A stretch of DNA of 64,000 bases, from IMG/VR virus record IMGVR_UViG_3300027759_000045, positions 124,001 through 188,000 of that record, one strand, 5' to 3'. Shown in pieces: positions 630-25,565 of this stretch. Numbering within the stretch: the first letter of the stretch is position 1; each line of letters starts with the position of its first letter. A program made the translations under genes and the position numbers. Under the pieces are notes generated by a model. That model was not told where the DNA came from. It searched no databases and saw nothing but the letters and a program-made list of their open reading frames with translations.

Positions 630-641
630 TTAAGGAATTGT

Positions 642-5121: not shown

Positions 5122-5457
5122 ATGGCAATAACAAACACTTATCCAGACGAATACAAACAATGGCAACCTGAACAGGTTAAAATCATTGGAGACCGAGCTG
5201 TAAAGTTTAGTGACGTGTGCGTACACCAGATACGCATGGGCGATGTAGAGGATCCTGATTTGTATGTGGCACAACCTATATATGAATGGCAGGAATCAGA
5301 TGCTGGTAAGTTCATCATGGAACATGCGGTAGAAAAACCTTATTGGACTCGTCAAGCAGATATTGCCAGTTACGGGCACTTGTATCGTATAATGGCTAGA
5401 CTCAGCGAGCAAGATCAAACTTTCTGGACTCTTAAATGGGGAGAATTTAAAAAATGA
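5122..5457 (+). CDS. Hypothetical protein
   Basis: 111-aa ORF with GDVEDPDLY motif; ATGA-coupled to the epimerase. Confidence 0.75.
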   Translation: MAITNTYPDEYKQWQPEQVKIIGDRAVKFSDVCVHQIRMGDVEDPDLYVAQPIYEWQESDAGKFIMEHAVEKPYWTRQADIASYGHLYRIMARLSEQDQTFWTLKWGEFKK

Positions 5458-6422
5458 AAATACTAGTAACAGGCGGACTTGGTCTTATTGGACACAATGT
5501 TGTGCAACGATTAGAAGCACAAGGACACGACGTTGTCATTACCGACACTCGTACCAACTACGGTATTATTCCCCAGGCTGAAGTTGACTACTTGATGTCA
5601 GAACGTTTGAAAAAGATATCAGGCAACAACATATATCACATTGACATTACCGATGCTGACAATGTTGATTGGCTAGTAAATAAACACCAGCCTGAAGTGA
5701 TTATTCACATGGCCAGTTTCCCCCGACAGAAAGTTGTCAATGCTAACCCTGCCTGGGGTAGTCGTGTGATGAGCGAAGGTCTTATTAACATCTGTGAGAG
5801 TGCCAAAAAACACCATGTCAGTCGTGTAGTGTACATTAGCAGTAGCATGGTATACGGCGACTTTGATGATCAAGTTGAAGAGGACTACAATTGCCGACCC
5901 ATTGGCCAATATGGCATCTTAAAATTAACAGGAGAAGACATTGTCAAAGACTACCATCGTCGCGGCGCTTTTGATTACGCTATTATTAGGCCTAGTGCTG
6001 TATACGGCCCCTTGGATGTGGAGGACCGAGTTGTTGCAAAATTTATGCTCACAGCAATGCGAGGCGGCGTTCTCCGAGTTAATGGGGCAGGGGAGACGTT
6101 AGATTTTACCTACGTAGATGATGCCGCTGATGGCATTGTGGCTGCCGCAACACTTGAACACGCACGTAATGATACATACAATATTACCAAATCACATTCA
6201 GTGAGTTTGTTACAAGCCGCAGAAATGATTGTGAAGATTGTGGGCCAAGGCACCATTGAATGTCGCGACAAAGATGCAGACTTTCCCAGTCGCGGTGCAT
6301 TAAATATCACCAAGGCCCGGGCTGTACTAGGATATGATCCCCAAGTGGATGTAGAAGAAGGATTCGAAAATTACTTCAACTGGCTTAACAATTCCGTTTA
6401 CTGGTCTCCGAAAACAGTATAA
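5454..6422 (+). CDS. NAD-dependent nucleotide-sugar epimerase/dehydratase (extended SDR)
   Basis: MKILVTGGLGLIG Rossmann motif, SSSMVYG, YGILK (YxxxK), RPSAVYGP and DFTYVDD. Confidence 0.93.
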   Translation: MKILVTGGLGLIGHNVVQRLEAQGHDVVITDTRTNYGIIPQAEVDYLMSERLKKISGNNIYHIDITDADNVDWLVNKHQPEVIIHMASFPRQKVVNANPAWGSRVMSEGLINICESAKKHHVSRVVYISSSMVYGDFDDQVEEDYNCRPIGQYGILKLTGEDIVKDYHRRGAFDYAIIRPSAVYGPLDVEDRVVAKFMLTAMRGGVLRVNGAGETLDFTYVDDAADGIVAAATLEHARNDTYNITKSHSVSLLQAAEMIVKIVGQGTIECRDKDADFPSRGALNITKARAVLGYDPQVDVEEGFENYFNWLNNSVYWSPKTV

Positions 6423-7479
6423 CAATCTCCGTACAGAGATTCTAGACGTCACCGACGAAGTTCTTCGCGGTGGCCAACTCATGAACGGCAACAATACTGC
6501 AGAGTTTGAATCATGGTTGGCTCGAAAGAACCATGTACGCTATGCAGTAACTTGTCATTCTGGCACACACGCACTTGAGATATTGGCCGGATATTGGGCC
6601 ACGGAATCTCCTGTGCCGCATCCTCCTACTGTGTTAATTCCTGCAATGACTTACGTGGCCACTGCCAATGCATTTATACGTGCAGGATGGGATATACACA
6701 TCATTGACACAGATGCACAGGGATTAATCGATCTTACTAAAATTCCCACAGGCATAAGTTACCAAGCAGTGGTGTTGGTCGGTCTATATGGCGCCGCTGT
6801 CACACATCACGGCAGTGTTCGTACCTGGGAACACTGGATACAACATGATACTCTCGTAATTGAAGATGCTGCCCAACATTGGTTAGCTGCCGACTGCACA
6901 AGGATAGGCAAAGGTGGTGCAGCCATCAGTTTTGATCCTATGAAAAATCTTGCTTGTTATGGCAATGGCGGTGCTGTGGTCACAGACAACTTAGATCTAG
7001 CAGAATATGCTAGATCGTGGCGAGACAATGGTAAACCTACACATAAGAACACAGGAACTAACAGTCGCATGAGCGAATTAGACTGTGCGCACATGTTGGT
7101 TAAATCCAAACACATCGATCGTTGGCAAGCACGTAGACAAAAGATCTCAGACCACTGGGCAGATCGGTTTAAAGACACTGGAATACGTTGTTTAATCAAC
7201 GACACCAATGCACACAATCATGCGTTTCATAAGTTTGTTATTGATGTTGACAAACGAGATATATTAAAAGCCAATCTTGCACTGTGCAAAATTGACACGC
7301 GAGTACACTATGCGACTCCATTGCAAGAAATCAGTTTGTATCGTATGTTTCCAGGACCTGACATGTTGGCAGCAAGTTCTAGTCTAGCTCGGCGTGTACT
7401 AAGCCTGCCTATCTACCCCGAACTTACAGACCTAGAAGTCGAATACATCAGCGATCAGGTTGTAAACTGCGTCGCATAA
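6370..7479 (+). CDS. DegT/DnrJ/EryC1/StrS-family PLP-dependent sugar aminotransferase (start uncertain: ATT 6370 or 6391, or ATG 6481)
   Basis: SGTHAL, TYVATANA, IEDAAQ, SFDPMKNL (PLP lysine), GNGGAV and LSLPIYP. Family-like sequence IPFTGLRKQY continues upstream of the first ATG. Confidence 0.92.
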   Translation: MTSTGLTIPFTGLRKQYNNLRTEILDVTDEVLRGGQLMNGNNTAEFESWLARKNHVRYAVTCHSGTHALEILAGYWATESPVPHPPTVLIPAMTYVATANAFIRAGWDIHIIDTDAQGLIDLTKIPTGISYQAVVLVGLYGAAVTHHGSVRTWEHWIQHDTLVIEDAAQHWLAADCTRIGKGGAAISFDPMKNLACYGNGGAVVTDNLDLAEYARSWRDNGKPTHKNTGTNSRMSELDCAHMLVKSKHIDRWQARRQKISDHWADRFKDTGIRCLINDTNAHNHAFHKFVIDVDKRDILKANLALCKIDTRVHYATPLQEISLYRMFPGPDMLAASSSLARRVLSLPIYPELTDLEVEYISDQVVNCVA

Positions 7480-10279
7480 ACGCATAACTGGCCAACCAAG
7501 ACCACTCATAGCTCTTCTTCAAGTCTGCAAAGTTGCCGGCTACTTGGTCGTAGTATTCCACAGCATCTTCGGCGCCCCATTGACTCCATTCGGCATTTTT
7601 AGCTTCACCAGCATTGCTGAGCCACATGTTAAGTCTGTATTCACTTTCGACATCGGGTAAACTGGCTTTTAATTTAAGAACTTCACGGAATGCAGTGCGC
7701 CAAGCTGTCCAAGGTGTTTCATTATAATTGGCTACACCACTAAGCACGGGCACAACTTCGTGCGGTTGATCTAATGTAAAGTCCAATCCTGCTCCAGTAT
7801 TCTTCAACACCATTTTTTTGTTGTAGGCAATCATGGCTTGGTGACCATATGTTAATCCATTTACAGGATTGTATGCGTGGAAGATATAGTGTTTGGGTTG
7901 TTGCATACGATCAGGTTGCCAGGTCCAATCAAACATTTGATTCACTTCTAGCTTGGCAAACACAGCAAAGAACCAAGGCGTGGTGCTGGCTCTAGCAGCC
8001 GCATGATACGCTGCCACTCGTCCATTTACACCTTCTACCACATGAACGCGGTTTGTGTACCTTGACTCGTTGGCCAGATATATTGTCATCTGCAAATAAT
8101 TAGATCCAGCATTAGGTTCGCCATTGCTGATAAACACAATGTCCAATGGTTGATCTGTTAACTTGCGATGTGTTCGATCTATGTGTGTGTAGTCATACAA
8201 CTGTGTGCGAATGTCACCTACTGCTACTCTCGGCACAATTACACTAGTGGCACCTGAACTTAGTGGCACAATAGTTTTGGTCTCTTTGCGCCACAAAGGC
8301 ACAGTAAACACATCAGAGCACACAGTGTCTACAGTGGTAAATGTGGCCAATGGACCCGACCATGTTGTGTTTTTAACTACATCAACATGACTGTCTTCTG
8401 TGTGTTGGATCACAGGCATGGGTCTGCGTGGAACACGAATTTTAGGCACATAGTTTACACTGTACCATTCCAGCAGAGCTTTCTTTTCTGCACGAGCCGC
8501 AAATGTAGGAACATGCATATAAAATGTATCTCCAAACTTTTGTTCATTGCTGGCAAATACATGTAGCATGGTACTTTGCCATTTTTCTGGATGCCACGAA
8601 AAGTCAAAGTCTGTGTAGTCACAAATACTGCTACACACCCATACAAACTCATGCTCACCAACAAGACTCTTTGCCAACCGTATCAGAGTATCTCTATAGT
8701 TGTCAAAGTAACGCACCTTCTTTATGGCTCCGGGAACTTGTCCTCCAGCACCATCCAGGTGATCTATTTCAATAACAGGAACTGTGACTGTTTCAATCTT
8801 GATCTCTACATGCTCAAGGTATTTGATTTCTGTTGCGCCTGACACATGATACTGTGGACCACCGGTCTTTTGCCATTGTGTAGCAAACTGATAGATGTAA
8901 GCGGGTTCGCCAGGATCCGGAACCCAAGTGAAGTCCACGTGTTCTTCACGCACACCCTCAGGTAGCACCCACATTGTTTTGTTGGGTAATAGTGCGGCTC
9001 TGGGGTAGTCCATGTACTTGACGGGCAATTCTTGATCCTGGGGCTCAGAACAATAACGCAACATGGGCATTTTCTCTGCAGGCCAGTGTTGATTTCCAAA
9101 CACATATATCATAGGCGGCTCTCCTGGATCGGGCTGCCAAGAGTAGTCGAACTCATAATCATGATGACTGATGTTGTCCCAGTGTAGCTGTGTTTCCGGC
9201 AACTGAGCACGTGGGTAATCCATGTACTTGTGTTCAGTAGCACCAGGCACAGTGTATGTAACAGTGGGCATGATCTCTGCTGAATGCCACTGATTACCAA
9301 ACACGTAGATGTAGGGTGGATCTCCTGGATCTGGAATCCATGAATAATCCCAGTCGCACTGTTGTATAGTGTGCCACTTGTTGTCTTGCCGTACAGGTAA
9401 TTTAGCCCGGGGATAATCCATGTACTTGCGTTCAGTGGCATGGCCCACACAGTATTCCACTGTGGGCATGATCTCTGCTGTGTGCCATTCATTGCCAAAC
9501 ACATATATGTAATCTGGATCTGTAGGATTGGGTCTCCAACTATGATCAAAGTCAGCAATATCGTGCAACACGCCGAAGTCTGCAGGACTAGATGCTACAG
9601 TAGCCACAATATTATCTACATACTTGATTTCTGTGCTGCCAGGCACTGTATAAACTATAGTAGGTTCTAATACTCCAGGATTCCATTGATTGCCAAACAC
9701 ATACGTATAAGGAGGATCAAAAGGATTTGGTTCCCAAGAATAATCAAACTTGCTCACTGCCAGGTTATGCGCAAACAACTGTGGCTGTGGTAATCTCGTT
9801 GTTTTTAAATCCATGTATTTGCGTTCTGTTGCTCCAGGAACAACATACTCTACACTGGCTTTATATTCAGGCGAGTTCCACTGATTACCAAATACATAGA
9901 TATAAGGTGGCTCTGCTGGATCTGGATGCCAGGACCAATCCCATGCCTCTTGATCTATTGTTTCGTGTATTTTCCATGAATCTTCATTGTTAATTCTATG
10001 CAATACTACATCAGTGTGATAGGTTGTGTCTGTATAACCTGCCGCAGGAACAAGATACGTGCCGGAATCTTTTTGCCACTGACTTGCCCATGCATGTCGT
10101 TGGTGTGCTTGCCAAGGCACAGGTTCCCAAAGAAAATCAAAGCCAGAGTAGTCCGATAAGTAATTTACAAACCAAAAGAAACGTGTGCGACTCTGCTGTT
10201 GTGCTTGTTCAATGGTATCTACTGCCTGCTCATGCGCAAACAAATTGGGCTTTTTTCCAGAATAAAATACATCAAACAT
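7448..10279 (-). CDS. Trp/Pro-rich repeat protein with C-terminal glycosyltransferase-like domain
   Basis: Six tandem repeats of about 65 aa. The C-terminal domain aligns by eye with the 30134-31060 protein (VEGVNG..AAYHAAA, NPVNGLTYG, AWRTAFREVLKL). Confidence 0.75.
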   Translation of the reverse strand: MFDVFYSGKKPNLFAHEQAVDTIEQAQQQSRTRFFWFVNYLSDYSGFDFLWEPVPWQAHQRHAWASQWQKDSGTYLVPAAGYTDTTYHTDVVLHRINNEDSWKIHETIDQEAWDWSWHPDPAEPPYIYVFGNQWNSPEYKASVEYVVPGATERKYMDLKTTRLPQPQLFAHNLAVSKFDYSWEPNPFDPPYTYVFGNQWNPGVLEPTIVYTVPGSTEIKYVDNIVATVASSPADFGVLHDIADFDHSWRPNPTDPDYIYVFGNEWHTAEIMPTVEYCVGHATERKYMDYPRAKLPVRQDNKWHTIQQCDWDYSWIPDPGDPPYIYVFGNQWHSAEIMPTVTYTVPGATEHKYMDYPRAQLPETQLHWDNISHHDYEFDYSWQPDPGEPPMIYVFGNQHWPAEKMPMLRYCSEPQDQELPVKYMDYPRAALLPNKTMWVLPEGVREEHVDFTWVPDPGEPAYIYQFATQWQKTGGPQYHVSGATEIKYLEHVEIKIETVTVPVIEIDHLDGAGGQVPGAIKKVRYFDNYRDTLIRLAKSLVGEHEFVWVCSSICDYTDFDFSWHPEKWQSTMLHVFASNEQKFGDTFYMHVPTFAARAEKKALLEWYSVNYVPKIRVPRRPMPVIQHTEDSHVDVVKNTTWSGPLATFTTVDTVCSDVFTVPLWRKETKTIVPLSSGATSVIVPRVAVGDIRTQLYDYTHIDRTHRKLTDQPLDIVFISNGEPNAGSNYLQMTIYLANESRYTNRVHVVEGVNGRVAAYHAAARASTTPWFFAVFAKLEVNQMFDWTWQPDRMQQPKHYIFHAYNPVNGLTYGHQAMIAYNKKMVLKNTGAGLDFTLDQPHEVVPVLSGVANYNETPWTAWRTAFREVLKLKASLPDVESEYRLNMWLSNAGEAKNAEWSQWGAEDAVEYYDQVAGNFADLKKSYEWSWLASYAFMRRSLQPDR
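8810..9950 (-). repeat. Six tandem coding repeats, consensus [FW]DYSWxPDPxxPPYIYVFGNQW...PTVxYxVPGATExKYMD
   Basis: Seen directly in the translation; ends are approximate. Confidence 0.9.
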
Positions 10280-15407: not shown

Positions 15408-16673
15408 TTATAGGTGTGTCAGCCACGGAAACAACAGTTTCCAATCGGTGCCACGACGGCGATCTATTTCAGTTAGATAAACTTTCAAATCAGCAACACG
15501 TTCTGCGTTGCGCGGTCCTGCCACAATCTGTTTCATAATGCCACGCATGTGTTCTTTAGCACTGACTTCGCTGGGATTGCGTTCTCGCATTGCGGCCAAC
15601 AGACGCTCGAAGTCCTGTTCAAACACACCTGGTCCAAATATGTCTGGAACCATTTCAGGCGGTGTCATTACACTCATGAAACTGTAGCTAATAGGATTCC
15701 ACGGGTTTCGACGATCGTTCCATTCGTTTATCTTTTCTACTAGCTCAGGTGCTGTTTTAATTGTCAATGCCGACACTGCACTGTTCACGCACATCACAAC
15801 CCAGTCTTTATCCAGTAGATATTCCCAGTTTTCTGTCCACTCAGCCAAGTCTAGTCCCCACCGCACATACTCTTCTTGTGGTCCCCAGGCATCTATACTA
15901 CCTGTGATTTGCAATCGTTTTAGTGCGCCAGACTCAACCATCTTGCCAAATCGATCAATGTAGGCTCGGAACTTTTTAGGAGGTACCTTTAGGTTGGTAA
16001 TAATGTTGAATGTGAGTTCGGGATTGGGGTGACTCTCCCAGAAGTCCATGCTGATGTCAAATTCATCCTGGAAGAAAGGCTCGCCGCCTAGTATTTGATA
16101 GTAGCGTATGTGTTTGTAACGATCTTTCTCTTCAAGATAACGCCAAAAGTCTGCTAACATGCGCTCATAGTTGGGATTAGATTGTGTGTTATGCCCAAAG
16201 TTTACATTGCCTTGTGTAAACACACCAAATCGTCGGTTCTCTTCTTCCCATTTTGTACTAAAGTGACTGCCGCAATACAAGCAGGCCATGTTGCATACAT
16301 TGTTGAAATATACTTCTAATATGGTAGGTACAACTTCTAATGTAGCTGGATCTTCAAACAACTCGTGTGGAGTGCGATCTAGGTCATGACGAGCATGCAA
16401 TTGATATTGTCTATCGCTCATGCCGCCGGCTGTTTCAATTTTCTCACAGTATTGACAACCACCCTGTGGCCATTCGCCACGCAACATCATTTGCCTGGCT
16501 TCTATTTTGTTTGGCAGGTTATGAAAACTTTCAAAATTATCCGGAGGTATGGGTTGTTGGTCTGTGCGATGGCAACTGGCACTTGTGCCTTGATTTAAGT
16601 ACACAGTACTCCATGCCCACTTGAGCAAGCATCCTGTGTCTGTTTTGATTGGAAATACTTGTTTATCAGTCAT
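15408..16673 (-). CDS. Radical SAM enzyme with N-terminal twitch-like domain
   Basis: CLLKW...SCHR...CQYC, then CNMACLYC and GGEPF. Confidence 0.9.
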   Translation of the reverse strand: MTDKQVFPIKTDTGCLLKWAWSTVYLNQGTSASCHRTDQQPIPPDNFESFHNLPNKIEARQMMLRGEWPQGGCQYCEKIETAGGMSDRQYQLHARHDLDRTPHELFEDPATLEVVPTILEVYFNNVCNMACLYCGSHFSTKWEEENRRFGVFTQGNVNFGHNTQSNPNYERMLADFWRYLEEKDRYKHIRYYQILGGEPFFQDEFDISMDFWESHPNPELTFNIITNLKVPPKKFRAYIDRFGKMVESGALKRLQITGSIDAWGPQEEYVRWGLDLAEWTENWEYLLDKDWVVMCVNSAVSALTIKTAPELVEKINEWNDRRNPWNPISYSFMSVMTPPEMVPDIFGPGVFEQDFERLLAAMRERNPSEVSAKEHMRGIMKQIVAGPRNAERVADLKVYLTEIDRRRGTDWKLLFPWLTHL

Positions 16674-18181
16674 GAGCAGACTTTTACTCCGTATAATTGT
16701 TCAAATCTATCTGCGTCTGCACGATCATTTACCATGGGTTCACCACGTATGTTAAGACTTGTGTTAAGCAACATGGGACAACCTGTGTTCTTGTACCATT
16801 CTTCTAGCAGTTGTCTTATTCCGGAGCCATCCTTGGGAACAGTCTGTACCCTACTAGTGCCATCCCTATGAACGATAGCAGGAAATATGTGAGGATGCCT
16901 ACAGCGAGCGATGACTTGCATATACCTACTGTTATGGAAGCCATGAGGCATATCAAAATACATATCAACATGTTCCTCCAAAATGATTGGCGCAAATGGT
17001 CTGAATTGCTGTCGTCTTTTAATATCATTTACACGGTCCTTTATATCTGCACCACGCGGGTCTGCCAATAAACTACGATTGCCTAGAGCTCTAGGGCCAA
17101 ACTCTGCACGACCACTAGCAACACCCACAATTTTATCACGTAGCAAACAAGCCACAACGTCGTTGACAGGATAAGCACCAGGAATATCACTACCCAGATA
17201 GGCGTTGGTCCAATGTATCTGTTTTCCGTATGCCAGTGCTGCTGCCCCCAGGCTACTGCCAGCATCACCAGGACAAGGCATAATCCAAATGTTATCAAAG
17301 TATTCTCCTAGGTTGCGGTTAGCACTACAGTTGAGAGCAACACCGCCCATGTAGACCAAGTTGTTACTCCAGCCAAAGTCCCTGGCTCTACGCATTACTG
17401 AGTTGATCAGCTGTTCTGCTATGGCCTGTGCGCCAGCGGCAATATCAAACTCCGTTAAGCCTTCTAAGTACTGGTTGTCTATGCCGGTGTGCAGATTTTC
17501 ACGAAAGCGTATGGTGTCTACATCTTCTACCAATGCTTGCATTTTAACAGCGTGACCAGCATTGCCATATGCAGCCATGCCCATCAAGATATATTCTTCA
17601 TCTAATGGACGTAGGCCAACGCTGCCAGTAACTGCAGAGTAGAACAGTCCAATTGAATGTGGATAATGTTGTGTCCAAAGTTTTTTATACTTTGCCATGC
17701 CTTTTGAATCATATTCTGCTCCCCAGATAGTTACGGTGTCTAATTCGCCAATTGCATCAATTACAACCACTGTGGCCCTGTTATAGGGGCTGGATTGGAA
17801 TCCAGCGGCGGCGTGACTATGATGATGGGACATATATTTTCTAGGACATTGTAGTAGTCGCTGCCGATGAACAGTATCAGATAAGTGTTTACGCAGATAC
17901 TGATCCAAAGTAAAATTCCCAAAATTAAAGGCTTCCTCATATTGTCCCGAATATAGTTGTTGTAGTTTTTTGACCCACGGACGTTCATAGTATGCAATCA
18001 CATCCGGAGTTGCGTATGACATTGCTTCTGCAATGATTGAATCATTTAGATGTGCGTCGTTTTTGTTTTTGCTGTAGCGTTCTGCATGGCCAGCAAAAAG
18101 GACGCTGCCGTCAGACTGAATTACACTGACGGCAGCATCGTGAAATCCAGCACTGATACCAAAATATGTTTTCAACTTCAT
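16670..18181 (-). CDS. Carbamoyltransferase, NodU/CmcH/TobZ family
   Basis: HDAAV, ERYSKNK, HHHSHAAA, DAIGE, GGVALNC, GDAG, GRAEFGPRALGNRS, FRPFAP and LNTSLN.RGEP. Confidence 0.95.
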   Translation of the reverse strand: MKLKTYFGISAGFHDAAVSVIQSDGSVLFAGHAERYSKNKNDAHLNDSIIAEAMSYATPDVIAYYERPWVKKLQQLYSGQYEEAFNFGNFTLDQYLRKHLSDTVHRQRLLQCPRKYMSHHHSHAAAGFQSSPYNRATVVVIDAIGELDTVTIWGAEYDSKGMAKYKKLWTQHYPHSIGLFYSAVTGSVGLRPLDEEYILMGMAAYGNAGHAVKMQALVEDVDTIRFRENLHTGIDNQYLEGLTEFDIAAGAQAIAEQLINSVMRRARDFGWSNNLVYMGGVALNCSANRNLGEYFDNIWIMPCPGDAGSSLGAAALAYGKQIHWTNAYLGSDIPGAYPVNDVVACLLRDKIVGVASGRAEFGPRALGNRSLLADPRGADIKDRVNDIKRRQQFRPFAPIILEEHVDMYFDMPHGFHNSRYMQVIARCRHPHIFPAIVHRDGTSRVQTVPKDGSGIRQLLEEWYKNTGCPMLLNTSLNIRGEPMVNDRADADRFEQLYGVKVCS

Positions 18182-18279
18182 TTGTAGATAAAAGGATCTC
18201 GCTTGCGTAGTTCTTTTAGTTTTTTACGATAGCGTATTTCTAAACAAATACGATTGTATAAATTTTTAATCCAGTTCAT
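18178..18279 (-). CDS. 33-aa basic peptide ending DPFIYK, coupled to the carbamoyltransferase (not in ORF track)
   Basis: Hand translation MNWIKNLYNRICLEIRYRKKLKELRKRDPFIYK*. It starts 1 nt after the upstream stop, has SD AAGGA, and overlaps the downstream gene by ATGA. Confidence 0.75.
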   Translation of the reverse strand: MNWIKNLYNRICLEIRYRKKLKELRKRDPFIYK

Positions 18280-18280
18280 A

Positions 18281-19348
18281 TCATGTCCTTTGTATTATTT
18301 TAATTTGTTGGTCTGCATAATCTGCATCTGTCCAGTTATAACTGTATGTAGCTGTTGCATTGCTGGTGCGTATTTTATACACATCAAGATGCGTTCCCAA
18401 CATGTTCCATATATCTACATAGTTATCTGTTCCAAAACTACGGATCAAATCTACCTGAGCCACCTGCGGATGTCCAATGGTCAATGTTTTATCGTCTGGA
18501 TCAAATCCATTGTTTATTAACCATGTTCTAAAGTCTGCCAAATGCTTCTTTTGCCAGTCATGTGGGCCAGGATTGTTTGCCCACTCTATATCAAAATCAC
18601 CAGCAGCTTCAAGTTGACTACGCATGGTTGTGGTTGTTAAAGTATCAATGATCATATTGGGATTATAGTTGGCCTCGTCCACAAATACTTCCCAATGGTG
18701 TTTGCCCACAGCCTTATTTACGCCTACAAAAACTCCACCCAGTGGCCTATTGATTGTTTCAATTCCAAACAGTTCATAATCTTGTTTATCTAATAGAAAT
18801 CGTGGTGCGTGTAACCAACACATGAGTTGACTAGGTCGTTGCCATGCAGGTGCATAAAGTGCTTTGCGCATACTGAGAACAAGACTTTCGTATTCATGAC
18901 ATAACAAATTTAATTGTCTTATATGCCATCGTGTAGTAGAATCTGCTTTGGTATAAAAAGGACTCATTGCACCCGATACACCTTGTAAATCTTCAAAGTA
19001 ACGATGTAGATAGTTTAACTTATCATGTATTAACGTTGTATCAGGCGTAATAGTATTAGCAGTTGAGAAATAATCGTCAATTTGATATCCAATGTTGGCA
19101 GCATTAATGGCAGCAATACTACTGTTCATTTGTTCAGTCAAGTATTCTGCGTTGCGCTGACTTTGTGTAAATCCAAAAAAACAGTAATTCTTTTCCAAAT
19201 GATAATTGTCACGGATCAGGGTATTTAATGCGGCAAGCCATTTGTGACTCAGGCTGTTGTCCGCCACATCTATATGCACAGTGAGCAGACTATCTTTTCC
19301 GCGCAGGTCTATTTCAATTTGATCTATCATTGTATATTCATCCACCAT
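18281..19348 (-). CDS. Hypothetical protein
   Basis: 355-aa ORF in the operon; LNYLHRYFEDLQG and LNLLCHEYE His/Glu helices could bind metal. Confidence 0.75.
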   Translation of the reverse strand: MVDEYTMIDQIEIDLRGKDSLLTVHIDVADNSLSHKWLAALNTLIRDNYHLEKNYCFFGFTQSQRNAEYLTEQMNSSIAAINAANIGYQIDDYFSTANTITPDTTLIHDKLNYLHRYFEDLQGVSGAMSPFYTKADSTTRWHIRQLNLLCHEYESLVLSMRKALYAPAWQRPSQLMCWLHAPRFLLDKQDYELFGIETINRPLGGVFVGVNKAVGKHHWEVFVDEANYNPNMIIDTLTTTTMRSQLEAAGDFDIEWANNPGPHDWQKKHLADFRTWLINNGFDPDDKTLTIGHPQVAQVDLIRSFGTDNYVDIWNMLGTHLDVYKIRTSNATATYSYNWTDADYADQQIKIIQRT

Positions 19349-20625
19349 TTTAATACATCAGGCCGGCTGCTCAGTATGTCTGTCATTGTGACTTGTTGTG
19401 TACGTATCTGTTCTAATTTTAACACACGTGCCTTGCCTTTTGCAATACCTGCGGCATACTGATCCGGCCATTGTTCAGCAAACGTAGGGCGTGTGCGTAG
19501 TTGAATTAACATGTCTCGCATCACTTGTGTGCGACATTGCGGTAACATTTCGTCAATCCAATCATGTAGCAATTCACGCGGCAATGCTAACGGACTCATA
19601 ACAATGTCAGGACCGAAACTGAATATCACTTTGGCCAACAGTTCTACTCCATACGTTTGCGCTAACGTTTCCATTGCACCAATCTCAAACATGCCTGGAA
19701 GAGTCAGCGTAAAGTCCAACCGCATCTGTCTACGATTTTTTTGGTACTTTAACCCTTCTTCAAAGTTTTGACAGAACTGTGAATAATCAAGTCCTGTTCT
19801 GATGTATTCTCCGATGTGTCCGGTTCCGTCAAGGCTGGCACAAATCTGCCAGTCACGTATGTTGGTCAAAATGTCACGATATAAATTAACGCCACGATAC
19901 TCAATGCGACTAAGATTGGTGTTATATCTAGCATATAGCTTAGGTCCATCTCCAAGTTCTACAATTCTTTTCATATACCGCCAATGTTGTTCATACATTA
20001 AAGGTTCTCCGCCCACCCAATAAATCTCTTCTACACGGTGTTGTTCTACTGCTTCGGCAAATTCTGACTCAATTTGCTCATCTTGAAACTTGGTTATTTC
20101 TTGACGTATTTCTGTGCGCATCCAATTGTTCTTAGGATTGTGCCAGTTGGTCATGTCATGTGTCTTTTGCTCTGTTTCCCATGCACTACTTAACATGTCT
20201 CCGCAGGTTCTACATTTAAAGTTACACAGGTTTGAGAAACGGTAATCCCAACTAACTGGTTTCATCGTGGTATACCCTGTGCTGTCTGTAGTAGTAACTG
20301 CATCGTCATATTTGTGTTTGAATAAATGCCAAAAATAACTGCGGTAAACATCAGTGTTTAACAGTTTACTATTACACACGTCGCATTCTGGTAATGTTTC
20401 GCCTGCCATCATTCTACGTCGAACTGATCGCATGTGATCACTGTTCCAGTGTTGCTCTAGTGTAACAGGCGTGTACCGGCCAGAGCCTGCAGATGTGTCA
20501 ATATACTGCTCAAAACTCTGTGCAGGTTCTCTGGAAGCGCAACACATACGCCGTTCTGTTTGTGGACTTAGATACGTGTGTGTCCATGGCGCCATGCACA
20601 ATGTATCAGGCTTTGTTGTAGTCAT
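19327..20625 (-). CDS. Radical SAM enzyme with N-terminal twitch-like domain
   Basis: CMAPW...MCC...CDVC, then CNFKCRTC, GGEPL, YNTN and ASLDG. Confidence 0.9.
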   Translation of the reverse strand: MTTTKPDTLCMAPWTHTYLSPQTERRMCCASREPAQSFEQYIDTSAGSGRYTPVTLEQHWNSDHMRSVRRRMMAGETLPECDVCNSKLLNTDVYRSYFWHLFKHKYDDAVTTTDSTGYTTMKPVSWDYRFSNLCNFKCRTCGDMLSSAWETEQKTHDMTNWHNPKNNWMRTEIRQEITKFQDEQIESEFAEAVEQHRVEEIYWVGGEPLMYEQHWRYMKRIVELGDGPKLYARYNTNLSRIEYRGVNLYRDILTNIRDWQICASLDGTGHIGEYIRTGLDYSQFCQNFEEGLKYQKNRRQMRLDFTLTLPGMFEIGAMETLAQTYGVELLAKVIFSFGPDIVMSPLALPRELLHDWIDEMLPQCRTQVMRDMLIQLRTRPTFAEQWPDQYAAGIAKGKARVLKLEQIRTQQVTMTDILSSRPDVLKWWMNIQ

Positions 20626-21826
20626 AATTGATCAATGCCGCAAACTCTGGTGCCACATCTGCTAAGTTTTGTTTTCGTTTGTAATCAAAGTCGCGCAGGT
20701 TCATTCGCAACAGATTTCCATCTAGGCTATTGCCACGATTCATAAACTCAGCCGCACTCACAAATTCTTTAAGTATCTTAGGCGGAACGCTTGCAGAGGT
20801 CAGTTGTTTAGTAATTTCTGCTTTGGCCGATTCTGGCAGTGTGCTGATACTAAAGTAATAGGCATCGTGCATCATGTTCCAGTAAATAAAATCAAATCCC
20901 TGTTGTACAAGCCAATTGGCCACTGTTTCGAGATAGTACACATTGAATACATTAATGGTGCAACAGGCCTGCAGAGTAATGTTGCTGTTGCGGCTGCGTA
21001 GTTGACGGAAACGTTCAACATTCTCCACAACTTCTGTCCACACAGCATTAGTGCGTTGATATTCAAAACGTTCAGCAACATCGTCGATGCTGACAGCAAT
21101 CTCTACATGTTTGAAATGTTTCCAGATTGCCTCACCTTCATCTGGATATTGTGTGCCATTGGTATTGTAATGTATTTCGACTTGTGCGGCACGTCCAGTA
21201 TCTACTAACTTTTGTAGCAGTTGGAAATGTTCTTTGATCATAAAAGGCTCGCCGCCAGTAAATTCAATGTAGCGTATGTTGTCCAGGTGCTGGTCTAGGT
21301 CTGTCCAGAACTCTGCGCTTTCTCTAGGCCAGGCACCGTCCTTCAGCATTTGATAAGCAAAGTTGCCACGAGTGTCTTCTGCACGATTATATTTAATTTC
21401 TTCCGCGGCGAACTGGCTACTGCTCCACGAACCACAAATGCGACATTTTAAGTTGCAGATGTTGCCCAGTTTAAGATCAAGGAACATCAATGGCATAGCA
21501 TCCGTGGTCCAGGAAACATCTGTGTCAATCATGTGCTTGAGTCTGTCTAGTGTATGCATACGTTTACTTGTGCGACCTGCACGTTCTTCGTTCCAGCAAC
21601 GCCGGCAGTTTTGCGGCTTTTTGCCAGCAAGAAAGTCTTCACGCAGAGTTTTCATTGCTTGACTATTTTGTATTTCAACTAATCCAGTAGAGGCCAGTTT
21701 ATATTTGTCACCAGCATCGTTGGTAATTTCATCCATGGCCAAACAGCATGGTCGCACAGTGCCAACAGGACTAGCCTCTAGACTGATCCAGGGTAACACG
21801 CAAAAAGTGTCATGTGGTATGTTCAT
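20606..21826 (-). CDS. Radical SAM enzyme with N-terminal twitch-like domain
   Basis: CVLPW...PCC...CRRC, then CNLKCRIC, GGEPF and YNTNGT. Confidence 0.9.
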   Translation of the reverse strand: MNIPHDTFCVLPWISLEASPVGTVRPCCLAMDEITNDAGDKYKLASTGLVEIQNSQAMKTLREDFLAGKKPQNCRRCWNEERAGRTSKRMHTLDRLKHMIDTDVSWTTDAMPLMFLDLKLGNICNLKCRICGSWSSSQFAAEEIKYNRAEDTRGNFAYQMLKDGAWPRESAEFWTDLDQHLDNIRYIEFTGGEPFMIKEHFQLLQKLVDTGRAAQVEIHYNTNGTQYPDEGEAIWKHFKHVEIAVSIDDVAERFEYQRTNAVWTEVVENVERFRQLRSRNSNITLQACCTINVFNVYYLETVANWLVQQGFDFIYWNMMHDAYYFSISTLPESAKAEITKQLTSASVPPKILKEFVSAAEFMNRGNSLDGNLLRMNLRDFDYKRKQNLADVAPEFAALINYDYNKA

Positions 21827-23106
21827 TTAATTGCTCTTAGTTCAGGTAATACATCAAGCACATGTTCTCGTCTAATGCTGTCAAGCTCGTGCGTCTTGCG
21901 CCAAAAAGTGTCTAGTAGATGTGTGTTGTCAGTGCTGTTCATAAATGTAATAGCACTTTCAAATCCCACAGTGGCACGATTTAATTGATCCAATGGGCGC
22001 AACCATTCTAAGTGTTGCTCATACTTAGATTGTATTTGTTGTTTGTACTCTGCAGGTGCGATGTCGATACGCAAGTATGCAGGGTCTTGAAGTATGTTCA
22101 CGTTGAGATCCTGAGGTTTTAATAAACCTTTTTCTACCCAGTCTCTGTGAAAGTCAGGAAGATGCAGTGCATTCATTATACTCAATGTAGGACTGATATA
22201 AAAGTCTACCCTAGGGCATATTTCCATCATCTGTCTACGATTAGATTCTACCACAGCCCAGTCTGTGCCTTTACGTATATACTCACCTCGTGGACCCGAC
22301 GCATCAAGGCTTGCACCAACTGCCACGCTGTCAAATTTGCGCCAGTAATCAAACACTGTGCGGTCTTTAAGACGTGTCTGTGTAAAGTTAGTATTGTATA
22401 TTAGTCTAACATCAAAGCGACCACGACGTTCTAGTTCTTCTAGAATCCGGTAGTGCTCTTCCATCATCAAGGGTTCGCCGCCGGCAAAGTAAATCTGCTC
22501 CACGTGATCAATATGCTCAATCAGCTGTTCCCACAGATCAGTGGCAAAACGACCAGCATAGTTAAGAGGTTTGTTTTGACTGGCCCAAGCGGATCCTGCT
22601 AATTCTGTTTGATCTTTGTACCAACTTGAACTAAAGATATGCCCACAACTACGGCAACTTAAATTGCAAAGATTACTAAACCGCAGATCCCAATAGGTCA
22701 TTTCAAATTGATCAACATGCCCAGCAGCATCTGTATTGTCTACACGGGCAACATGGTGCCCGTGGTGCTTGTTGGCACTTTTACGTCCACTGAAAAATCC
22801 TGATTCTTCCTGTTCGTAGCAACGGCCACAGGTAGGATTAGGTGTTTCGGCCAGCATGTCAACTCTGAGTTGTTTTTGTTCGGCACTGTTCCATATTTCT
22901 GCCAGTGTGTTTGATCTGCAGTTGCCAATTTGGCCCACACCCATTTCGGCATGACAGCAAGGATATGCTTCGCCTGTGGGATATGCGTGTAAGTGTATCC
23001 AAGGGTAGATGCAAAATGTTTTGGAATCTTTTAATAAAAATTCTTCACGTTCTGAAAGTTCTGTTGGACGTACTAAATCTGTTGAATTATATTTGTATTG
23101 AGTCAT
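21823..23106 (-). CDS. Radical SAM enzyme with N-terminal twitch-like domain
   Basis: CIYPW...PCC...IGN...CGRC, then CNLSCRSC and GGEPL. Confidence 0.9.
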   Translation of the reverse strand: MTQYKYNSTDLVRPTELSEREEFLLKDSKTFCIYPWIHLHAYPTGEAYPCCHAEMGVGQIGNCRSNTLAEIWNSAEQKQLRVDMLAETPNPTCGRCYEQEESGFFSGRKSANKHHGHHVARVDNTDAAGHVDQFEMTYWDLRFSNLCNLSCRSCGHIFSSSWYKDQTELAGSAWASQNKPLNYAGRFATDLWEQLIEHIDHVEQIYFAGGEPLMMEEHYRILEELERRGRFDVRLIYNTNFTQTRLKDRTVFDYWRKFDSVAVGASLDASGPRGEYIRKGTDWAVVESNRRQMMEICPRVDFYISPTLSIMNALHLPDFHRDWVEKGLLKPQDLNVNILQDPAYLRIDIAPAEYKQQIQSKYEQHLEWLRPLDQLNRATVGFESAITFMNSTDNTHLLDTFWRKTHELDSIRREHVLDVLPELRAIK

Positions 23107-24445
23107 ACCATGTTGATAATGTTACGTCTAACGAATAACTGTCTTTAAATGTATCTTTAAAACTTTTTCCGCGACGTTGATCGTACTGTGTGTAAAACTG
23201 CTTAAAATCATTGTGTAACTTAGGCATATCAAATGCGTCTGAATGCGGAGTTTTTACTACATCTAAATAATCAATTAATCTCTGTAGGTGATTAATCTCG
23301 TGTTCGTGCAGTATGTCAGGAACCGCTTTCCATCGCTGTAGGAAATTAGATAAGTCAAGCATGTGACGTGTAAGCAATGCCCGGGGCAATACCAGTGGAC
23401 TTTGAAAACTGGGAAATCTCAATATATTTAATGTAAAGTTAACACGTTCACGACCATACTTTGATTTAAGTTGTACTACGTAATGCAGAAGCATTGGCAA
23501 CGTTGTCAAGCACAATGCATTAATGGTGGCCATTATGTGTACTGCACCCACATGACTGTCTAGTAATTTAACTACATTTTTTTCCCAAGCAGGATAATCT
23601 AGTCCATCTCGAATATATTCAGCGGCAGCGCCAACAGCTTCCATGGATGTGTAAATTTCCACATCCAATCCTTGAGTGCTTTCAATTAATCTATCCACGT
23701 CAACATCTGCACCAAGATTAGAATTAATTGCTAACCGGGTGGTCGATCTACCGGGATTGTTTTTAAACCAGTCAATCAATTTCCATGTCTCGGCACTCAT
23801 TAGCGGTTCGCCGCCGGTGATTCTCAGTTCTTGGAGTGTTTGGTGAAGGTCAGTTTCCCACCATTTAAAAAACGCTTCAACATAGGGATTAGTTTCACCA
23901 AGCCGGTATAGTTGACTGCTAGCGTGAGCATGAGTAAAGTGGTTACGCCCATCAGACACCAGGCCGACATAAGGTCCGCTTCGCTTGATATCATTGACCC
24001 ATGTGCTACTGAAAGCAGGGTTACAATAGCTACAAGCAAATTGGCAAGTGCGATCGAACGCAATTTCAAGTGTGCGAAGATTGACATCTTCGGTGTGTGG
24101 GGTGTTATATGCTTCATCTAAGGCCTTTATAGGATAAATTTTACTTTTGTACACACGGTCTGATACGGAATCTTTGCCCATGTCTTCGATCTTCCAACAG
24201 TATTCACAACCTGAGGGACGTTTCCCTTCCAACATCAGTCGTCGATCATCTTTTTTCTTTGCAGTGTTATGCAATGCAGATGGATTAATTTTTAATTGTT
24301 CAACATCGATTGCGTGTGCTGGAGGGTGATGACAGCTGGTGGTCTGGCCCGAACCTAGCCATATGGTGGCATTGTACCATTTGGCCGCACAAAAACTTGC
24401 ACTCTTGGTGTCTAAAATTTCATGTTTAAAGTCTAAATCGTTCAT
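23087..24445 (-). CDS. Radical SAM enzyme with N-terminal twitch-like domain
   Basis: CAAKW...SCHHPP...CEYC, then CQFACSYC and GGEPL. Start at ATG 24445 (MNDLDF) is preferred to avoid a 119-nt overlap. Confidence 0.88.
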   Translation of the reverse strand: MNDLDFKHEILDTKSASFCAAKWYNATIWLGSGQTTSCHHPPAHAIDVEQLKINPSALHNTAKKKDDRRLMLEGKRPSGCEYCWKIEDMGKDSVSDRVYKSKIYPIKALDEAYNTPHTEDVNLRTLEIAFDRTCQFACSYCNPAFSSTWVNDIKRSGPYVGLVSDGRNHFTHAHASSQLYRLGETNPYVEAFFKWWETDLHQTLQELRITGGEPLMSAETWKLIDWFKNNPGRSTTRLAINSNLGADVDVDRLIESTQGLDVEIYTSMEAVGAAAEYIRDGLDYPAWEKNVVKLLDSHVGAVHIMATINALCLTTLPMLLHYVVQLKSKYGRERVNFTLNILRFPSFQSPLVLPRALLTRHMLDLSNFLQRWKAVPDILHEHEINHLQRLIDYLDVVKTPHSDAFDMPKLHNDFKQFYTQYDQRRGKSFKDTFKDSYSLDVTLSTWYDSIQI

Positions 24446-25565
24446 TGATAAATTGTTGGAAACGGTTGGGAAATTCTTTGCGAGTCTGTGTGCGCACTTC
24501 TGCAAGATGTTGTTGATTGTATTTACACACATTATAGCATTCATTTAGGAAACTTGCAAGATCTTGTTGGCACAAATCATTAACTATCATTGTTATTCTT
24601 TCCATTCGATCTTGATGATTATCAATAGAATCAAAACTTTCATCAATCACATGTCCAAATGTTTGAAATCCCAACTTGTGTATATCTCGATAAAATCCTA
24701 CACTGGTAGCACAGATCCACGGATGCCCCATGGCCAATGGTTTGGCAATTTTTTCTGTTCTAAAACTATACGGATATTCAAACACAGTTTCAGTTACTAA
24801 ACTAAAGTAGGTGTCAATATACGGAGCAGGTTCTAAATAAATTTCTCCCCATTTGCTGCCAAACAGTTCGTTCTTGGCAAATTTGTGTGGGTAGTCGATC
24901 ACAATACTATTATTTTTAAAAAATTCAAATTCATATTCTGAAGGCAAGTGTTTAATAGATGCAGTTTTTCCCAATAGATCTTGCCTGTTTTCTATTAGTG
25001 TAAAATGCCTGCTGCCACCGGCACGACCATCTAACAGTGTCCAAAGTGCATGATCCAACAGATTCATTTGTCGAAATCTTTCAAGTAGATATTTTCTATG
25101 TGATCTTGCTCGCCCATTTAGAAATAAAAATTTGTAGGGTTTGTTGTGTTTGGCAAAGATTTCATCAGTACGTTGTTGTGCCTGAATGTTTTCATCATAG
25201 TCCAAGATGTGTGTAATAAAATGTTCGTGCAATAGATATGGATATTGAGATTCCATCTCGCCTCCAGTTAGCAACAATAGTTGACCTGACAGTACCAGGT
25301 CCTCAATCTTTAACACATGCAATTGATCCAGTATAGTTTTAGAACCTTCGGCGCTGTTGCCAAATATCACAGTTATGGTTGGATCCTGTGTCATTGATCT
25401 GACACGATCTGTGTGTTCTACCATTTGCTTACGGCCTAATAGATAGATTGAATTGGACTGCGTTTCGTGCAGGCCCAAATCCCAGAATTCATCATCCGAG
25501 TAAGGTTTCATTATACTGTAAACCTCGCTCATTGTGTCAATAATAAACTTACGATTGCCGAGCAT
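24426..25565 (-). CDS. Glycosyltransferase-like protein (TEK family), paralog 3
   Basis: FLFLNGRARSHR; ETVFEYPYSFRTEKIAKPLAMGHPW...GFQTF...DESFD. Confidence 0.55.
   Translation of the reverse strand: MLGNRKFIIDTMSEVYSIMKPYSDDEFWDLGLHETQSNSIYLLGRKQMVEHTDRVRSMTQDPTITVIFGNSAEGSKTILDQLHVLKIEDLVLSGQLLLLTGGEMESQYPYLLHEHFITHILDYDENIQAQQRTDEIFAKHNKPYKFLFLNGRARSHRKYLLERFRQMNLLDHALWTLLDGRAGGSRHFTLIENRQDLLGKTASIKHLPSEYEFEFFKNNSIVIDYPHKFAKNELFGSKWGEIYLEPAPYIDTYFSLVTETVFEYPYSFRTEKIAKPLAMGHPWICATSVGFYRDIHKLGFQTFGHVIDESFDSIDNHQDRMERITMIVNDLCQQDLASFLNECYNVCKYNQQHLAEVRTQTRKEFPNRFQQFINERFRL

What the first reader, a model, noticed from the sequence alone, without database searches (positions are those of the whole stretch)
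7448..10279. Trp/Pro repeat protein built around an apparently inactive glycosyltransferase domain
Seen: six ~65-aa repeats ([FW]DxSWxPxPxxPxYIYVFGNQW...KY) flanked by three related modules (FDFLWEP, FDFSWHP, FDWTWQP). The C-terminal domain parallels the 30134-31060 protein but has FFAVFAKL where that protein has FILIDGDN, so the DxD motif is lost. Inference: the repeat derives from a glycosyltransferase subdomain, and the protein is a sugar-binding scaffold or chain-length ruler working with the active paralog. A less likely reading is that the repeated W-x-P motifs are radical SAM substrates.
Basis: partly seen in the sequence, partly recalled or inferred. Interest (0 to 1): 0.62.

Follow-up and report, generated by a model that had tools for sequence, protein, structure and literature searches.

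The report
Phage glycosyltransferase-like protein with self-derived repeats
A lake jumbo phage encodes a 943-residue protein whose tail end has a glycosyltransferase fold without the usual metal-binding motif and whose front is built of partial copies of that same fold; the family is large, unnamed and virus-only, but nothing shows the domain is dead.

Summary
ORF 7448-10279 (-) encodes 943 aa with six diverged ~66-aa repeats and three related modules. A repeat profile finds only these nine sites in the 347-kb genome.

The C-terminal 240 aa is homologous to the 30134-31060 protein (hhalign 99.9%). It models as a GT-A fold (pLDDT 95; Z 10-12 against solved GT-A enzymes). It reads F-A-K where the paralog reads D-G-D.

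- The repeats do derive from the GT-A domain. The short repeats match residues 780-815 (hhalign 95%). The middle domain is a truncated copy of the GT-A domain (94%).
- The missing DxD is not decay. Most of the ~110 relatives aligned show [F/N/P][A/G]K there, with a nearly invariant Lys, and the other polar invariants shared with the paralog are kept.
- Metal-independent GT-A enzymes are known, so "inactive" is unproven.
- Repeat number runs from 0 to 29 in relatives.
- The gene ends a conserved operon: DxD paralog, twitch radical SAM paralogs, carbamoyltransferase, then this gene. Amino-sugar genes lie alongside.
- Pairing with the paralog got weak support only (0.48 against control 0.00).
- The radical SAM substrate idea is not supported.

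Verdict: an uncharacterised variant of a known fold.

The parts
7448..10279 (-). Whole gene, 943 aa (P0001), stop codon included
   Evidence: An exhaustive search found 906 representative homologs.
9965..10279 (-). N-terminal long ('A-type') module, aa 1-105, with FDFLWEP at aa 47-53. It is a partial GT-A copy.
   Evidence: phmmer links aa 1-105 to aa 523-598 at 27 bits, and the module is repeated in relatives. The repeat HMM scores it at 45 bits.
9767..9961 (-). Short ('B-type') repeat 1, aa 107-171
9569..9766 (-). B-type repeat 2, aa 172-237
9371..9568 (-). B-type repeat 3, aa 238-303
   Evidence: Modelled at pLDDT above 90.
9170..9370 (-). B-type repeat 4, aa 304-370
8957..9169 (-). B-type repeat 5, aa 371-441
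8783..8956 (-). B-type repeat 6, aa 442-499
8168..8767 (-). Middle domain, aa 505-704, with FDFSWHP at aa 558-564. It is a truncated GT-A copy that lacks the first strand.
   Evidence: hhalign against the C-terminal domain: 93.7%, E 1.9e-7, 169 columns. Modelled at pLDDT about 95.
7451..8167 (-). C-terminal GT-A-fold domain, aa 705-943
   Evidence: Model pLDDT 95.2, pTM 0.90. Foldseek E 4.5e-5 to WrtF, with all top hits GT-A enzymes. VIA-align Z 10-12 over about 140 aa at rmsd about 3 A.
7952..7960 (-). F774-A775-K776, lying where the paralog has D-G-D (the DxD site)
   Evidence: K776 is nearly invariant in the family.
7913..7933 (-). FDWTWQP, aa 783-789, inside the GT-A domain. This segment is the one the B repeats match.
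   Evidence: hhalign of the B-repeat profile against aa 780-815: 95.3%, E 2.2e-8.
30134..31060 (-). DxD-bearing paralog, 308 aa (reads IDGDN)
   Evidence: An ortholog lies upstream on the same strand in 10 of 10 related large phage records.
16670..18181 (-). NodU/CmcH-type carbamoyltransferase. In many relatives it is the gene directly upstream of the P0001 homolog.
   Evidence: Pfam PF02543 and PF16861. Present in 67 of 80 loci. Synteny.
15408..26949 (-). Array of twitch-domain radical SAM paralogs (NF033640) plus unnamed genes, in the same operon-like block
5454..7479 (+). Gene for an SDR that resembles a 4,6-dehydratase or epimerase, and a PseC/DegT-like aminotransferase gene, converging on the 3' end of the gene
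   Evidence: Present in 48 and 44 of 80 loci.

Best explanation
Shown: P0001 is the last gene of a conserved glycan-pathway operon of lake jumbo phages. Its C-terminal 240 aa is a GT-A-fold domain, paralogous to a DxD-bearing GT-A protein encoded upstream in the same operon. In this lineage the DxD has been replaced throughout by [F/N/P][A/G]K. The rest of the conserved polar set is kept: E721, D833, R865, E866, K869 and the NGL-YG loop.

Shown: the other 700 aa were made by partial duplication of this domain. There are two long copies, running from helix 3 and the DxD strand onward. There are six short copies of the hairpin that follows the DxD strand (FDxSWxP plus two or three strands).

Inferred: the C-terminal domain is still a working ligand site. 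It is more likely a metal-independent transferase, in which Lys776 takes the place of the metal at the diphosphate, than a dead fold.

Inferred: the all-beta repeat array, whose length is freely variable between phages, binds or spans a repetitive acceptor. That acceptor could be a glycan chain or a repetitive virion or cell-surface polymer.
For: Fold:
- The model has pLDDT 95.2.
- Foldseek and VIA-align matches are to GT-A enzymes, Z 10-12. The BFVD and Atlas searches agree.

Homology to the paralog: hhalign 99.9%.

A fixed trait rather than decay:
- Most of the ~110 relatives aligned at this site show xAK or xGK, and so do 61 of the 80 viral loci.
- In a 92-sequence alignment with a median identity of about 43% to P0001, E721, D833, R865, E866 and K869 are invariant. 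K776, H813 and D790 are conserved at 90% or more.
- The same E, RE..K and NGL-YG blocks are invariant in the DxD type.

Precedent: metal-independent GT-A enzymes are known in GT6, GT14, GT29, GT42 and WrtF, and some use basic residues in place of the metal (PMC12595478; PMC3961637).

Origin of the repeats. Seven of the ten best (weak) structural matches of single repeats are GT-A enzymes.

Pathway context:
- In several relatives the co-directional order is DxD paralog, radical SAM, carbamoyltransferase, then this gene.
- The carbamoyltransferase is present in 67 of 80 loci.
- An SDR resembling a 4,6-dehydratase and a PseC-like aminotransferase are encoded next to the gene.

Repeat number ranges from 0 to 29, with proteins of 435-2717 aa.
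Against: - No activity, donor, acceptor or ligand is known for any member. All homologs are 'hypothetical' and none has a Pfam, PHROG or NCBIfam match.
- Coordinates of the model were not available, so it is not shown that K776 and the invariant residues line one pocket.
- Conserved polar residues are also expected in a binding-only pseudoenzyme.
- The repeat array matches no known carbohydrate-binding fold.
- Nucleotidyltransferases of the same superfamily score nearly as high (Z 9-10).
Confidence: 0.45

Rival explanations
1. Pseudo-glycosyltransferase scaffold. The C-terminal domain is catalytically dead and works as a non-catalytic partner of the DxD-bearing paralog. The repeats serve as a glycan-binding platform or a chain-length ruler.
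For: - The DxD is absent.
- The paralog is present in 11 of 11 large genomes and is always upstream on the same strand.
- The paralog is far more conserved, at 78-96% identity and a near-fixed length of 307-310 aa, as expected of the catalytic partner.
- The complex prediction passed weakly: ipSAE 0.48 (runs 0.48, 0.63, 0.44), best control 0.00, partner pLDDT at least 83, and the runs share at least 77% of their contacts.
- Tandem or paired GT-A domains with one inactive member are known. Examples among the structural matches are the CHSY3-CHPF complex and mimivirus R699.
Against: - By the tool's own calibration, a pass at 0.60 or under is more often wrong than right unless the pairing was likely beforehand.
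- The two chains are homologs, so a homodimer-like interface could be copied.
- The invariant Lys at the DxD site and the retained E/RE..K set argue for a live pocket.
- Loss of DxD does not imply loss of activity.
- Co-occurrence among related, syntenic phages is not independent evidence.
Confidence: 0.3
2. Structural protein. The repeat array is a rod or decoration of the virion, for example on the tail or fibres encoded nearby, and the GT-A domain is a vestigial or binding head.
For: - The gene lies on the same strand as a baseplate and fibre module. That module includes a 4855-aa ORF and a Phage_base_V hit.
- The array is all-beta and of very variable length.
Against: - The conserved immediate neighbours are enzymes, not structural genes.
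- There is no similarity to known fibre or decoration folds.
- Many family members have no repeats at all.
Confidence: 0.1
3. The repeated W-x-P motifs are substrates of the neighbouring radical SAM enzymes, giving a giant RiPP-like precursor.
For: - At least seven radical SAM genes share the block, several with SPASM or twitch domains.
- The best solved relative of one of them is the peptide maturase SkfB, but only at E 0.007.
Against: - Homologs with 0-1 motifs keep 1-4 radical SAM neighbours, and those with 18-29 motifs have none within the flank. Spearman rho is -0.54, partly an effect of the fixed flank length.
- A repeat-less DxD-type homolog in a Bdellovibrionales genome sits beside the same twitch radical SAM type.
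- The repeats model as compact beta units at pLDDT above 90.
- The W, P, Y and F pattern is typical of a folded core.
- Twitch and SPASM radical SAM enzymes also act on sugars (general knowledge; BtrN is the example recalled, not tested here).
Confidence: 0.03

Closest known systems
GT-A fold glycosyltransferases of the GT2 type (WrtF 9omm, SpsA 1h7l, TarS/TarP, SunS/ThuS, STIV A197)
   Same: The alpha/beta/alpha fold is shared over about 140 core residues (Z 9.6-10.7, rmsd about 3 A; Foldseek E 4.5e-5). The paralog has its DGD on the strand where these enzymes have DxD.
   Different: No sequence-family membership: Pfam gives nothing for P0001 and only PF13641 at E 0.096 for the paralog. P0001 has F-A-K at the DxD site. 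It has an FDxxWxP hairpin after that strand and a helical C-terminal extension of its own.
Metal-independent GT-A enzymes (bacterial GT6 BoGT6a, GT14 C2GnT-L, WrtF)
   Same: GT-A fold without a functional DxD. In BoGT6a and C2GnT-L, basic side chains take over the role of the metal (PMC12595478, PMC3961637).
   Different: In those enzymes the basic residues come from C-terminal elements, not from the DxD position itself. No activity is known here.
Catalytic plus non-catalytic GT-A pairs (CHSY3-CHPF 9q8z; mimivirus R699 and the LH3-type GT plus accessory domain)
   Same: Several GT-A-like domains in one protein or complex, one of them without a DxD. The structural matches are 9q8z at Z 10.7 (142 aa, rmsd 3.0 A) and R699 at Z 9.2, but the R699 match has an rmsd of about 13 A.
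   Different: Here the extra copies are truncated fragments multiplied 0-29 times. Whether any copy is non-catalytic is unknown.
Polymer-directed GT-A enzymes with appended binding repeats (TarS, RmlT, GalNAc-T lectin domains)
   Same: A catalytic GT-A head joined to repeated non-catalytic modules that engage a polymeric acceptor. This is a resemblance from general knowledge. TarS (5tzi) and RmlT are among the Foldseek matches, and RmlT also appears in the VIA-align list.
   Different: Their appended modules are unrelated folds (Ig-like, ricin-type). Here the modules derive from the catalytic fold itself.

Membership tests
GT-A fold (nucleotide-diphospho-sugar transferase superfamily) | Rossmann-like alpha/beta/alpha sandwich with the GT-A strand order | tested here: met
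   The model of aa 505-943 has pLDDT 95.2. All top Foldseek hits are GT-A. VIA-align gives Z 10-12 over model residues 205-349.
GT-A fold (nucleotide-diphospho-sugar transferase superfamily) | DxD (or D/E-x-D) metal-binding motif at the end of strand 4 | tested here: not met
   P0001 has F774-A775-K776 opposite D64-G65-D66 of the paralog. The same holds in the aligned relatives. The paralog and the bacterial homologs meet this feature.
GT-A fold (nucleotide-diphospho-sugar transferase superfamily) | Acidic catalytic base in the C-terminal half | tested here: inconclusive
   E866 (motif FRE..K) and D833 are invariant and shared with the DxD type. Their position in the pocket could not be checked without coordinates.
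GT-A fold (nucleotide-diphospho-sugar transferase superfamily) | Glycosyl transfer from an activated donor | not testable with these tools
   No biochemical data exist for any family member.
Curated GT sequence families (Pfam Glycos_transf_2 and relatives) | Score above the family's gathering threshold | tested here: not met
   No Pfam, NCBIfam or PHROG family matches P0001. The PDB sequence search and the profile search found nothing.
Pseudo-glycosyltransferase (non-catalytic GT-A partner) | Loss of catalytic motifs together with relaxed conservation of the former active site | tested here: not met
   The DxD is lost, but it is replaced by a nearly invariant Lys, and the other polar invariants are retained.
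Pseudo-glycosyltransferase (non-catalytic GT-A partner) | Stable complex with an active paralog | tested here: inconclusive
   Complex prediction gave weak support: 0.48 against a best control of 0.00. Co-occurrence is 11 of 11.
RiPP-type radical SAM substrate | Repeat motifs associated with and dependent on the maturase genes; an unstructured core peptide | tested here: not met
   There is no positive association between repeat number and radical SAM neighbours. The repeats are modelled as folded.
Known carbohydrate-binding modules | Sequence or fold match to a CBM or lectin family | tested here: not met
   Pfam finds nothing. The best Foldseek E-value against the PDB is 1.9. VIA-align over the wide library gives Z of at most 3.1.

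The most novel reading that the evidence does not exclude
A virus-only GT-A lineage swapped its metal-binding DxD for a lysine and multiplied its own acceptor-side hairpin into an array of 0-29 units. The array acts as a processivity clamp or length ruler for a carbamoylated amino-sugar polymer that jumbo phages build on their own fibres or on the host surface. It would be an enzyme that made its substrate-binding domain out of fragments of its own catalytic fold.
Probability: 0.2. Interest if true: 0.7.

Novelty: new variant of a known kind. Interest (0 to 1): 0.55.

Why it matters
The family is large: 906 representatives at 50% identity, more than 4,400 sequences and at least 588 viral contigs. 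It is confined to uncultured phages of lakes and other waters and has no name or Pfam model.

It offers a clean natural case of new domains arising by partial duplication of an enzyme fold. It also offers a natural test of whether a Lys can stand in for the DxD-metal pair in a GT-A enzyme.

It marks a conserved phage operon for making a modified sugar. The operon holds a 4,6-dehydratase-like SDR, a PseC-like aminotransferase, a carbamoyltransferase and about seven twitch radical SAM paralogs. Neither the product nor the target of this operon is known. If the target is the virion or the host surface, the operon bears on how abundant freshwater jumbo phages recognise hosts or evade them.

Tried and rejected
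- Pfam, PHROGs and NCBIfam on P0001 and on the paralog gave nothing usable.
- The PDB sequence and profile searches found no hit.
- The GenBank phage collection holds only a DxD-type 233-aa homolog in Ralstonia phage RsoM2USA, annotated as hypothetical. There was no DNA match.
- The repeat model found no significant match in the PDB by Foldseek or VIA-align.
- The Atlas searches returned only unnamed viral clusters of the same family and weak GT2 and GT92 leads.
- Tandem Repeats Finder found no DNA-level repeat.
- The promoter and terminator scan found counts at chance level.
- Read laying (2,832 bases, within the operators' limit) on four freshwater runs showed identical pieces. This confirms the sequence in other samples. 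The contigs break inside the repeats, and all joints have sides of 33 letters or fewer, all but one at 30 or fewer, at 90% likeness. No statement on repeat-number polymorphism is made.
- The literature searches found no paper on this family or operon.
- Complex prediction with the paralog returned weak support and is not used as evidence of binding.
- The N-terminal module (aa 42-99) was modelled poorly (pLDDT below 50), probably because repeats were misaligned in my alignment. Its fold is inferred from sequence only.
Full report
**Source and gene**

The window is bases 124001-188000 of a 346,856-bp IMG/VR virus record with direct terminal repeats, that is, a complete jumbo phage genome. Near-identical pieces occur in freshwater and lake metagenomes from 24 studies. 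The finding's ORF, 7448..10279 on the minus strand, is open and encodes 943 aa (P0001).

**Observation**

Pattern search and alignment confirm six tandem repeats of 58-71 aa starting near aa 107, 172, 238, 304, 371 and 442. They are 24-63% identical pairwise. Three related motifs lie at aa 47, 558 and 783.

The copies are old, because Tandem Repeats Finder sees nothing at the DNA level.

A profile of the repeats, searched in six frames across the whole phage genome, hits only this ORF. Six hits have E 1e-25 to 3e-34, and three weak hits (E 5-8e-3) fall exactly on the three related modules. After one iteration on family members, the HMM scores the nine modules at 91 down to 24 bits.

Across 623 repeat instances from relatives, these positions are 84-99% conserved: D, W and P of FDxSWxP; the Y and F of YIYxF; Q; the Y of Y.VPGA; and K-Y.

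**C-terminal domain**

BLASTP aligns aa 712-903 with the 30134-31060 protein (23% identity, E 3e-4) and places FFAVFAKL opposite FILIDGDN. A profile-profile comparison of the two families gives 99.9% probability, E 2e-34, over 224 columns, with the same register.

An AlphaFold2 model of aa 505-943, made from a 92-sequence alignment, has pLDDT 95.2 and pTM 0.90.
- Foldseek against the PDB returns only GT-A glycosyltransferases at the top: WrtF at E 4.5e-5, then PcManGT, RmlT, ArnC, SunS/ThuS and K4CP.
- VIA-align gives Z 10-12 over about 140 residues at about 3 A for model residues 205-349. The matches include B4GALNT1, WrtF, a Leptospira GT and STIV A197. SpsA follows at Z 9.6. Nucleotidyltransferases of the same superfamily lie just below, at Z 9-10.
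- The BFVD and Atlas searches agree and otherwise return only unnamed viral relatives.

So the refutation condition 'no GT-A fold' is not met.

**Is the domain inactive?**

The DxD replacement is not peculiar to this protein. Most of the ~110 relatives aligned at this site and 61 of the 80 viral loci read [F/N/P][A/G]K there; the other 19 loci did not fit the search pattern.

In an alignment of 92 sequences with a median identity of about 43% to P0001:
- K776 is conserved at 90% or more.
- E721, F800, Y811, G812, D833, R865, E866, K869, W886 and W926 are invariant.

The DxD-type family, made up of the paralog, its phage orthologs and bacterial homologs, has the same invariant blocks: YDE/NGE, RV.GV.G, NGL.YG and (A/T)WR..FRE..K. 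The only block that differs is the DxD itself.

A decaying pseudoenzyme would not be expected to fix a lysine at the metal site and keep everything else. A binding-only derivative could do so, however.

The literature shows that loss of DxD does not mean loss of activity. Metal-independent GT-A enzymes are known in GT6, GT14, GT29 and GT42, and some use basic residues in place of the metal. The best Foldseek match, WrtF, has G-A-D in place of DxD and works in EDTA (PMC12595478; PMC3961637).

I therefore treat 'inactive' as unproven and somewhat less likely than 'active in a different way'.

**Origin of the repeats**

Three results show that the non-catalytic 700 aa are made of pieces of the GT-A domain.
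1. The B-repeat profile matches aa 780-815 of the C-terminal domain, which is the hairpin after the DxD strand. The match has 95.3% probability, E 2.2e-8, over 36 columns. The profile does not match the DxD-type paralog.
2. The middle domain (aa 505-704) aligns with the C-terminal domain from the RV.GV.GR strand onward (93.7%, E 1.9e-7, 169 columns). It lacks the first strand.
3. The N-terminal 105 aa match the start of the middle domain (27 bits) and occur in up to eight copies in relatives.

The corresponding segment of the DxD type has the same length, so it is native to the fold and not an insertion. Duplication out of the GT-A domain is thus the simpler direction.

A model of aa 1-520 has pLDDT 78.9 overall and above 90 for repeats 3-6. 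It shows three or four strands per repeat and no helices. It has no significant PDB match. Seven of the ten best weak rows (Z 2.2-3.1) are GT-A or GT-A-like proteins aligned to single repeats. That is suggestive only.

**Family and repeat number**

An exhaustive search finds 906 representatives, with lengths of 171-2248 aa. The core, aa 519-933, occurs alone in proteins of 420-450 aa.

The word-indexed search finds more than 4,400 sequences. All are 'hypothetical', none has a Pfam domain, and some lie on contigs of up to 355 kb.

At least 588 IMG/VR contigs encode a relative. In 80 of them the gene is 435-2717 aa long and holds 0-29 FDxSWxP motifs. Relatives with 71-81% identity in the core differ widely: 668, 738, 1067, 1132, 1199 and 1330 aa.

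The hits in 'bacterial' MAGs with the full core are most likely binned phage contigs. True cellular genomes, such as an 804-kb Bdellovibrionales contig and a 2.07-Mb Geminicoccaceae contig, hold only the short DxD type.

**Context**

Within 10 kb of the homolog in 80 loci, the conserved neighbours are:
- a NodU/CmcH-type carbamoyltransferase (67 loci);
- a DUF2201 metallopeptidase/VWA protein with an ATPase (54 and 41 loci);
- two paralogous unnamed genes at 10278-12564 (51 loci);
- an SDR epimerase or dehydratase (48 loci);
- a DegT/PseC-like aminotransferase (44 loci);
- radical SAM paralogs (39-47 loci).

The radical SAM paralogs belong to NF033640, the family of radical SAM proteins with an N-terminal twitch domain. 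They score 224-403 bits against a cutoff of 170.

Gene order in relatives shows a co-directional array: DxD paralog, radical SAM genes, o18281, carbamoyltransferase, then the P0001 homolog. In the window's lineage a plus-strand block (10278-15385) has been placed between the carbamoyltransferase side and P0001.

A DxD-type ortholog is present upstream on the same strand in all ten related large records checked. A Bdellovibrionales chromosome has a repeat-less DxD-type gene between two radical SAM/SPASM genes, one of them with the N-terminal twitch layout.

Downstream on the same strand lie baseplate and fibre genes, including a 4855-aa ORF.

**Test of partnership**

A complex prediction of aa 505-943 with the paralog gave a median ipSAE of 0.48 (runs 0.48, 0.63, 0.44), against 0.00 for the best of three controls. 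Partner pLDDT was at least 83 and the runs shared at least 77% of their contacts. The tool's verdict was 'weak support'. By its calibration, such a pass is more often wrong than right unless the pairing was likely beforehand. The chains are also homologs, so I do not count this as evidence of binding.

**Radical SAM substrate idea**

- Homologs with 0-1 motifs keep 1-4 radical SAM neighbours, and those with 18-29 motifs show none in the flank. Spearman rho is -0.54, partly an artefact of the fixed flank.
- The association with radical SAM genes also holds for repeat-less DxD-type genes.
- The repeats model as folded units.

The idea is not supported.

**Verdict**

The evolutionary inference, that the repeats derive from a glycosyltransferase subdomain, is supported. 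The functional reading, a dead domain serving as a scaffold, is one of two live options and not the favoured one.

The protein is best described as a new, virus-restricted variant of the GT-A fold, with a lysine at the DxD site and a variable array of fragments of its own fold. It ends a conserved phage operon for a modified amino sugar.

What it transfers or binds, and onto what, remains inference.

Noticed in passing
window 15408-28497 (-), also 13525-14607 (+): There are at least seven radical SAM genes. Five are tandem paralogs of NF033640 (radical SAM with an N-terminal twitch domain, 224-403 bits). The same type flanks a DxD-type GT-A gene in a Bdellovibrionales chromosome (L011 6542-7963). 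This is a conserved GT-A and twitch radical SAM association of unknown chemistry.
   Followed up: partly
window 10278-12564 (+): Two adjacent paralogous genes (371 and 395 aa) have no family match and share a ...TEKTFKAI... motif. From memory, the motif recalls the GDP-fucose motif of GT10-type fucosyltransferases. With 12557-15385 they form a plus-strand block. In relatives the block is absent or sits elsewhere, between the carbamoyltransferase and the P0001 homolog.
   Followed up: partly
window 10277-10279 and 7448-7479: The start codon of P0001 (minus strand) overlaps by 2 nt the start of the divergent gene at 10278. Its 3' end overlaps by 32 nt the convergent aminotransferase gene. There are therefore no intergenic spacers. 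Promoter-like and terminator-like sites are at chance level.
   Followed up: partly
window 36730-51297 (-): A giant 4855-aa ORF has an FG-GAP repeat and a weak CBM5/12 hit. It is followed by a 1144-aa ORF and a Phage_base_V protein (57043-58572). This is probably a fibre and baseplate module and a candidate target of the glycan pathway.
   Followed up: no
window 33-1949 and 4409-5101 (+): An ATPase (phrog_1297), a DUF2201 metallopeptidase/VWA pair and ThyX are conserved next to the sugar genes in most related phages (41-54 of 80 loci; ThyX in 18).
   Followed up: no
related record G005 (holds L097), 272495-273385 (-): The ortholog of the DxD paralog in this 329-kb complete phage genome has one in-frame TAG. 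This could be a pseudogene, a sequencing error or stop-codon recoding. It was not examined.
   Followed up: no
L004 and L005 (Haliscomenobacter sp. MAG, contigs of 148 and 183 kb): Two contigs of one Bacteroidota MAG each carry a full-length family member (66-67% identity in the core). They are probably jumbo-phage contigs binned with the MAG, which may be a clue to the host.
   Followed up: no
window 30134-31060 (-): The DxD paralog is unusually conserved in environmental data: 78-96% identity, a near-fixed length of 307-310 aa, and thousands of sequences. This is in sharp contrast with the length-variable P0001 family.
   Followed up: partly
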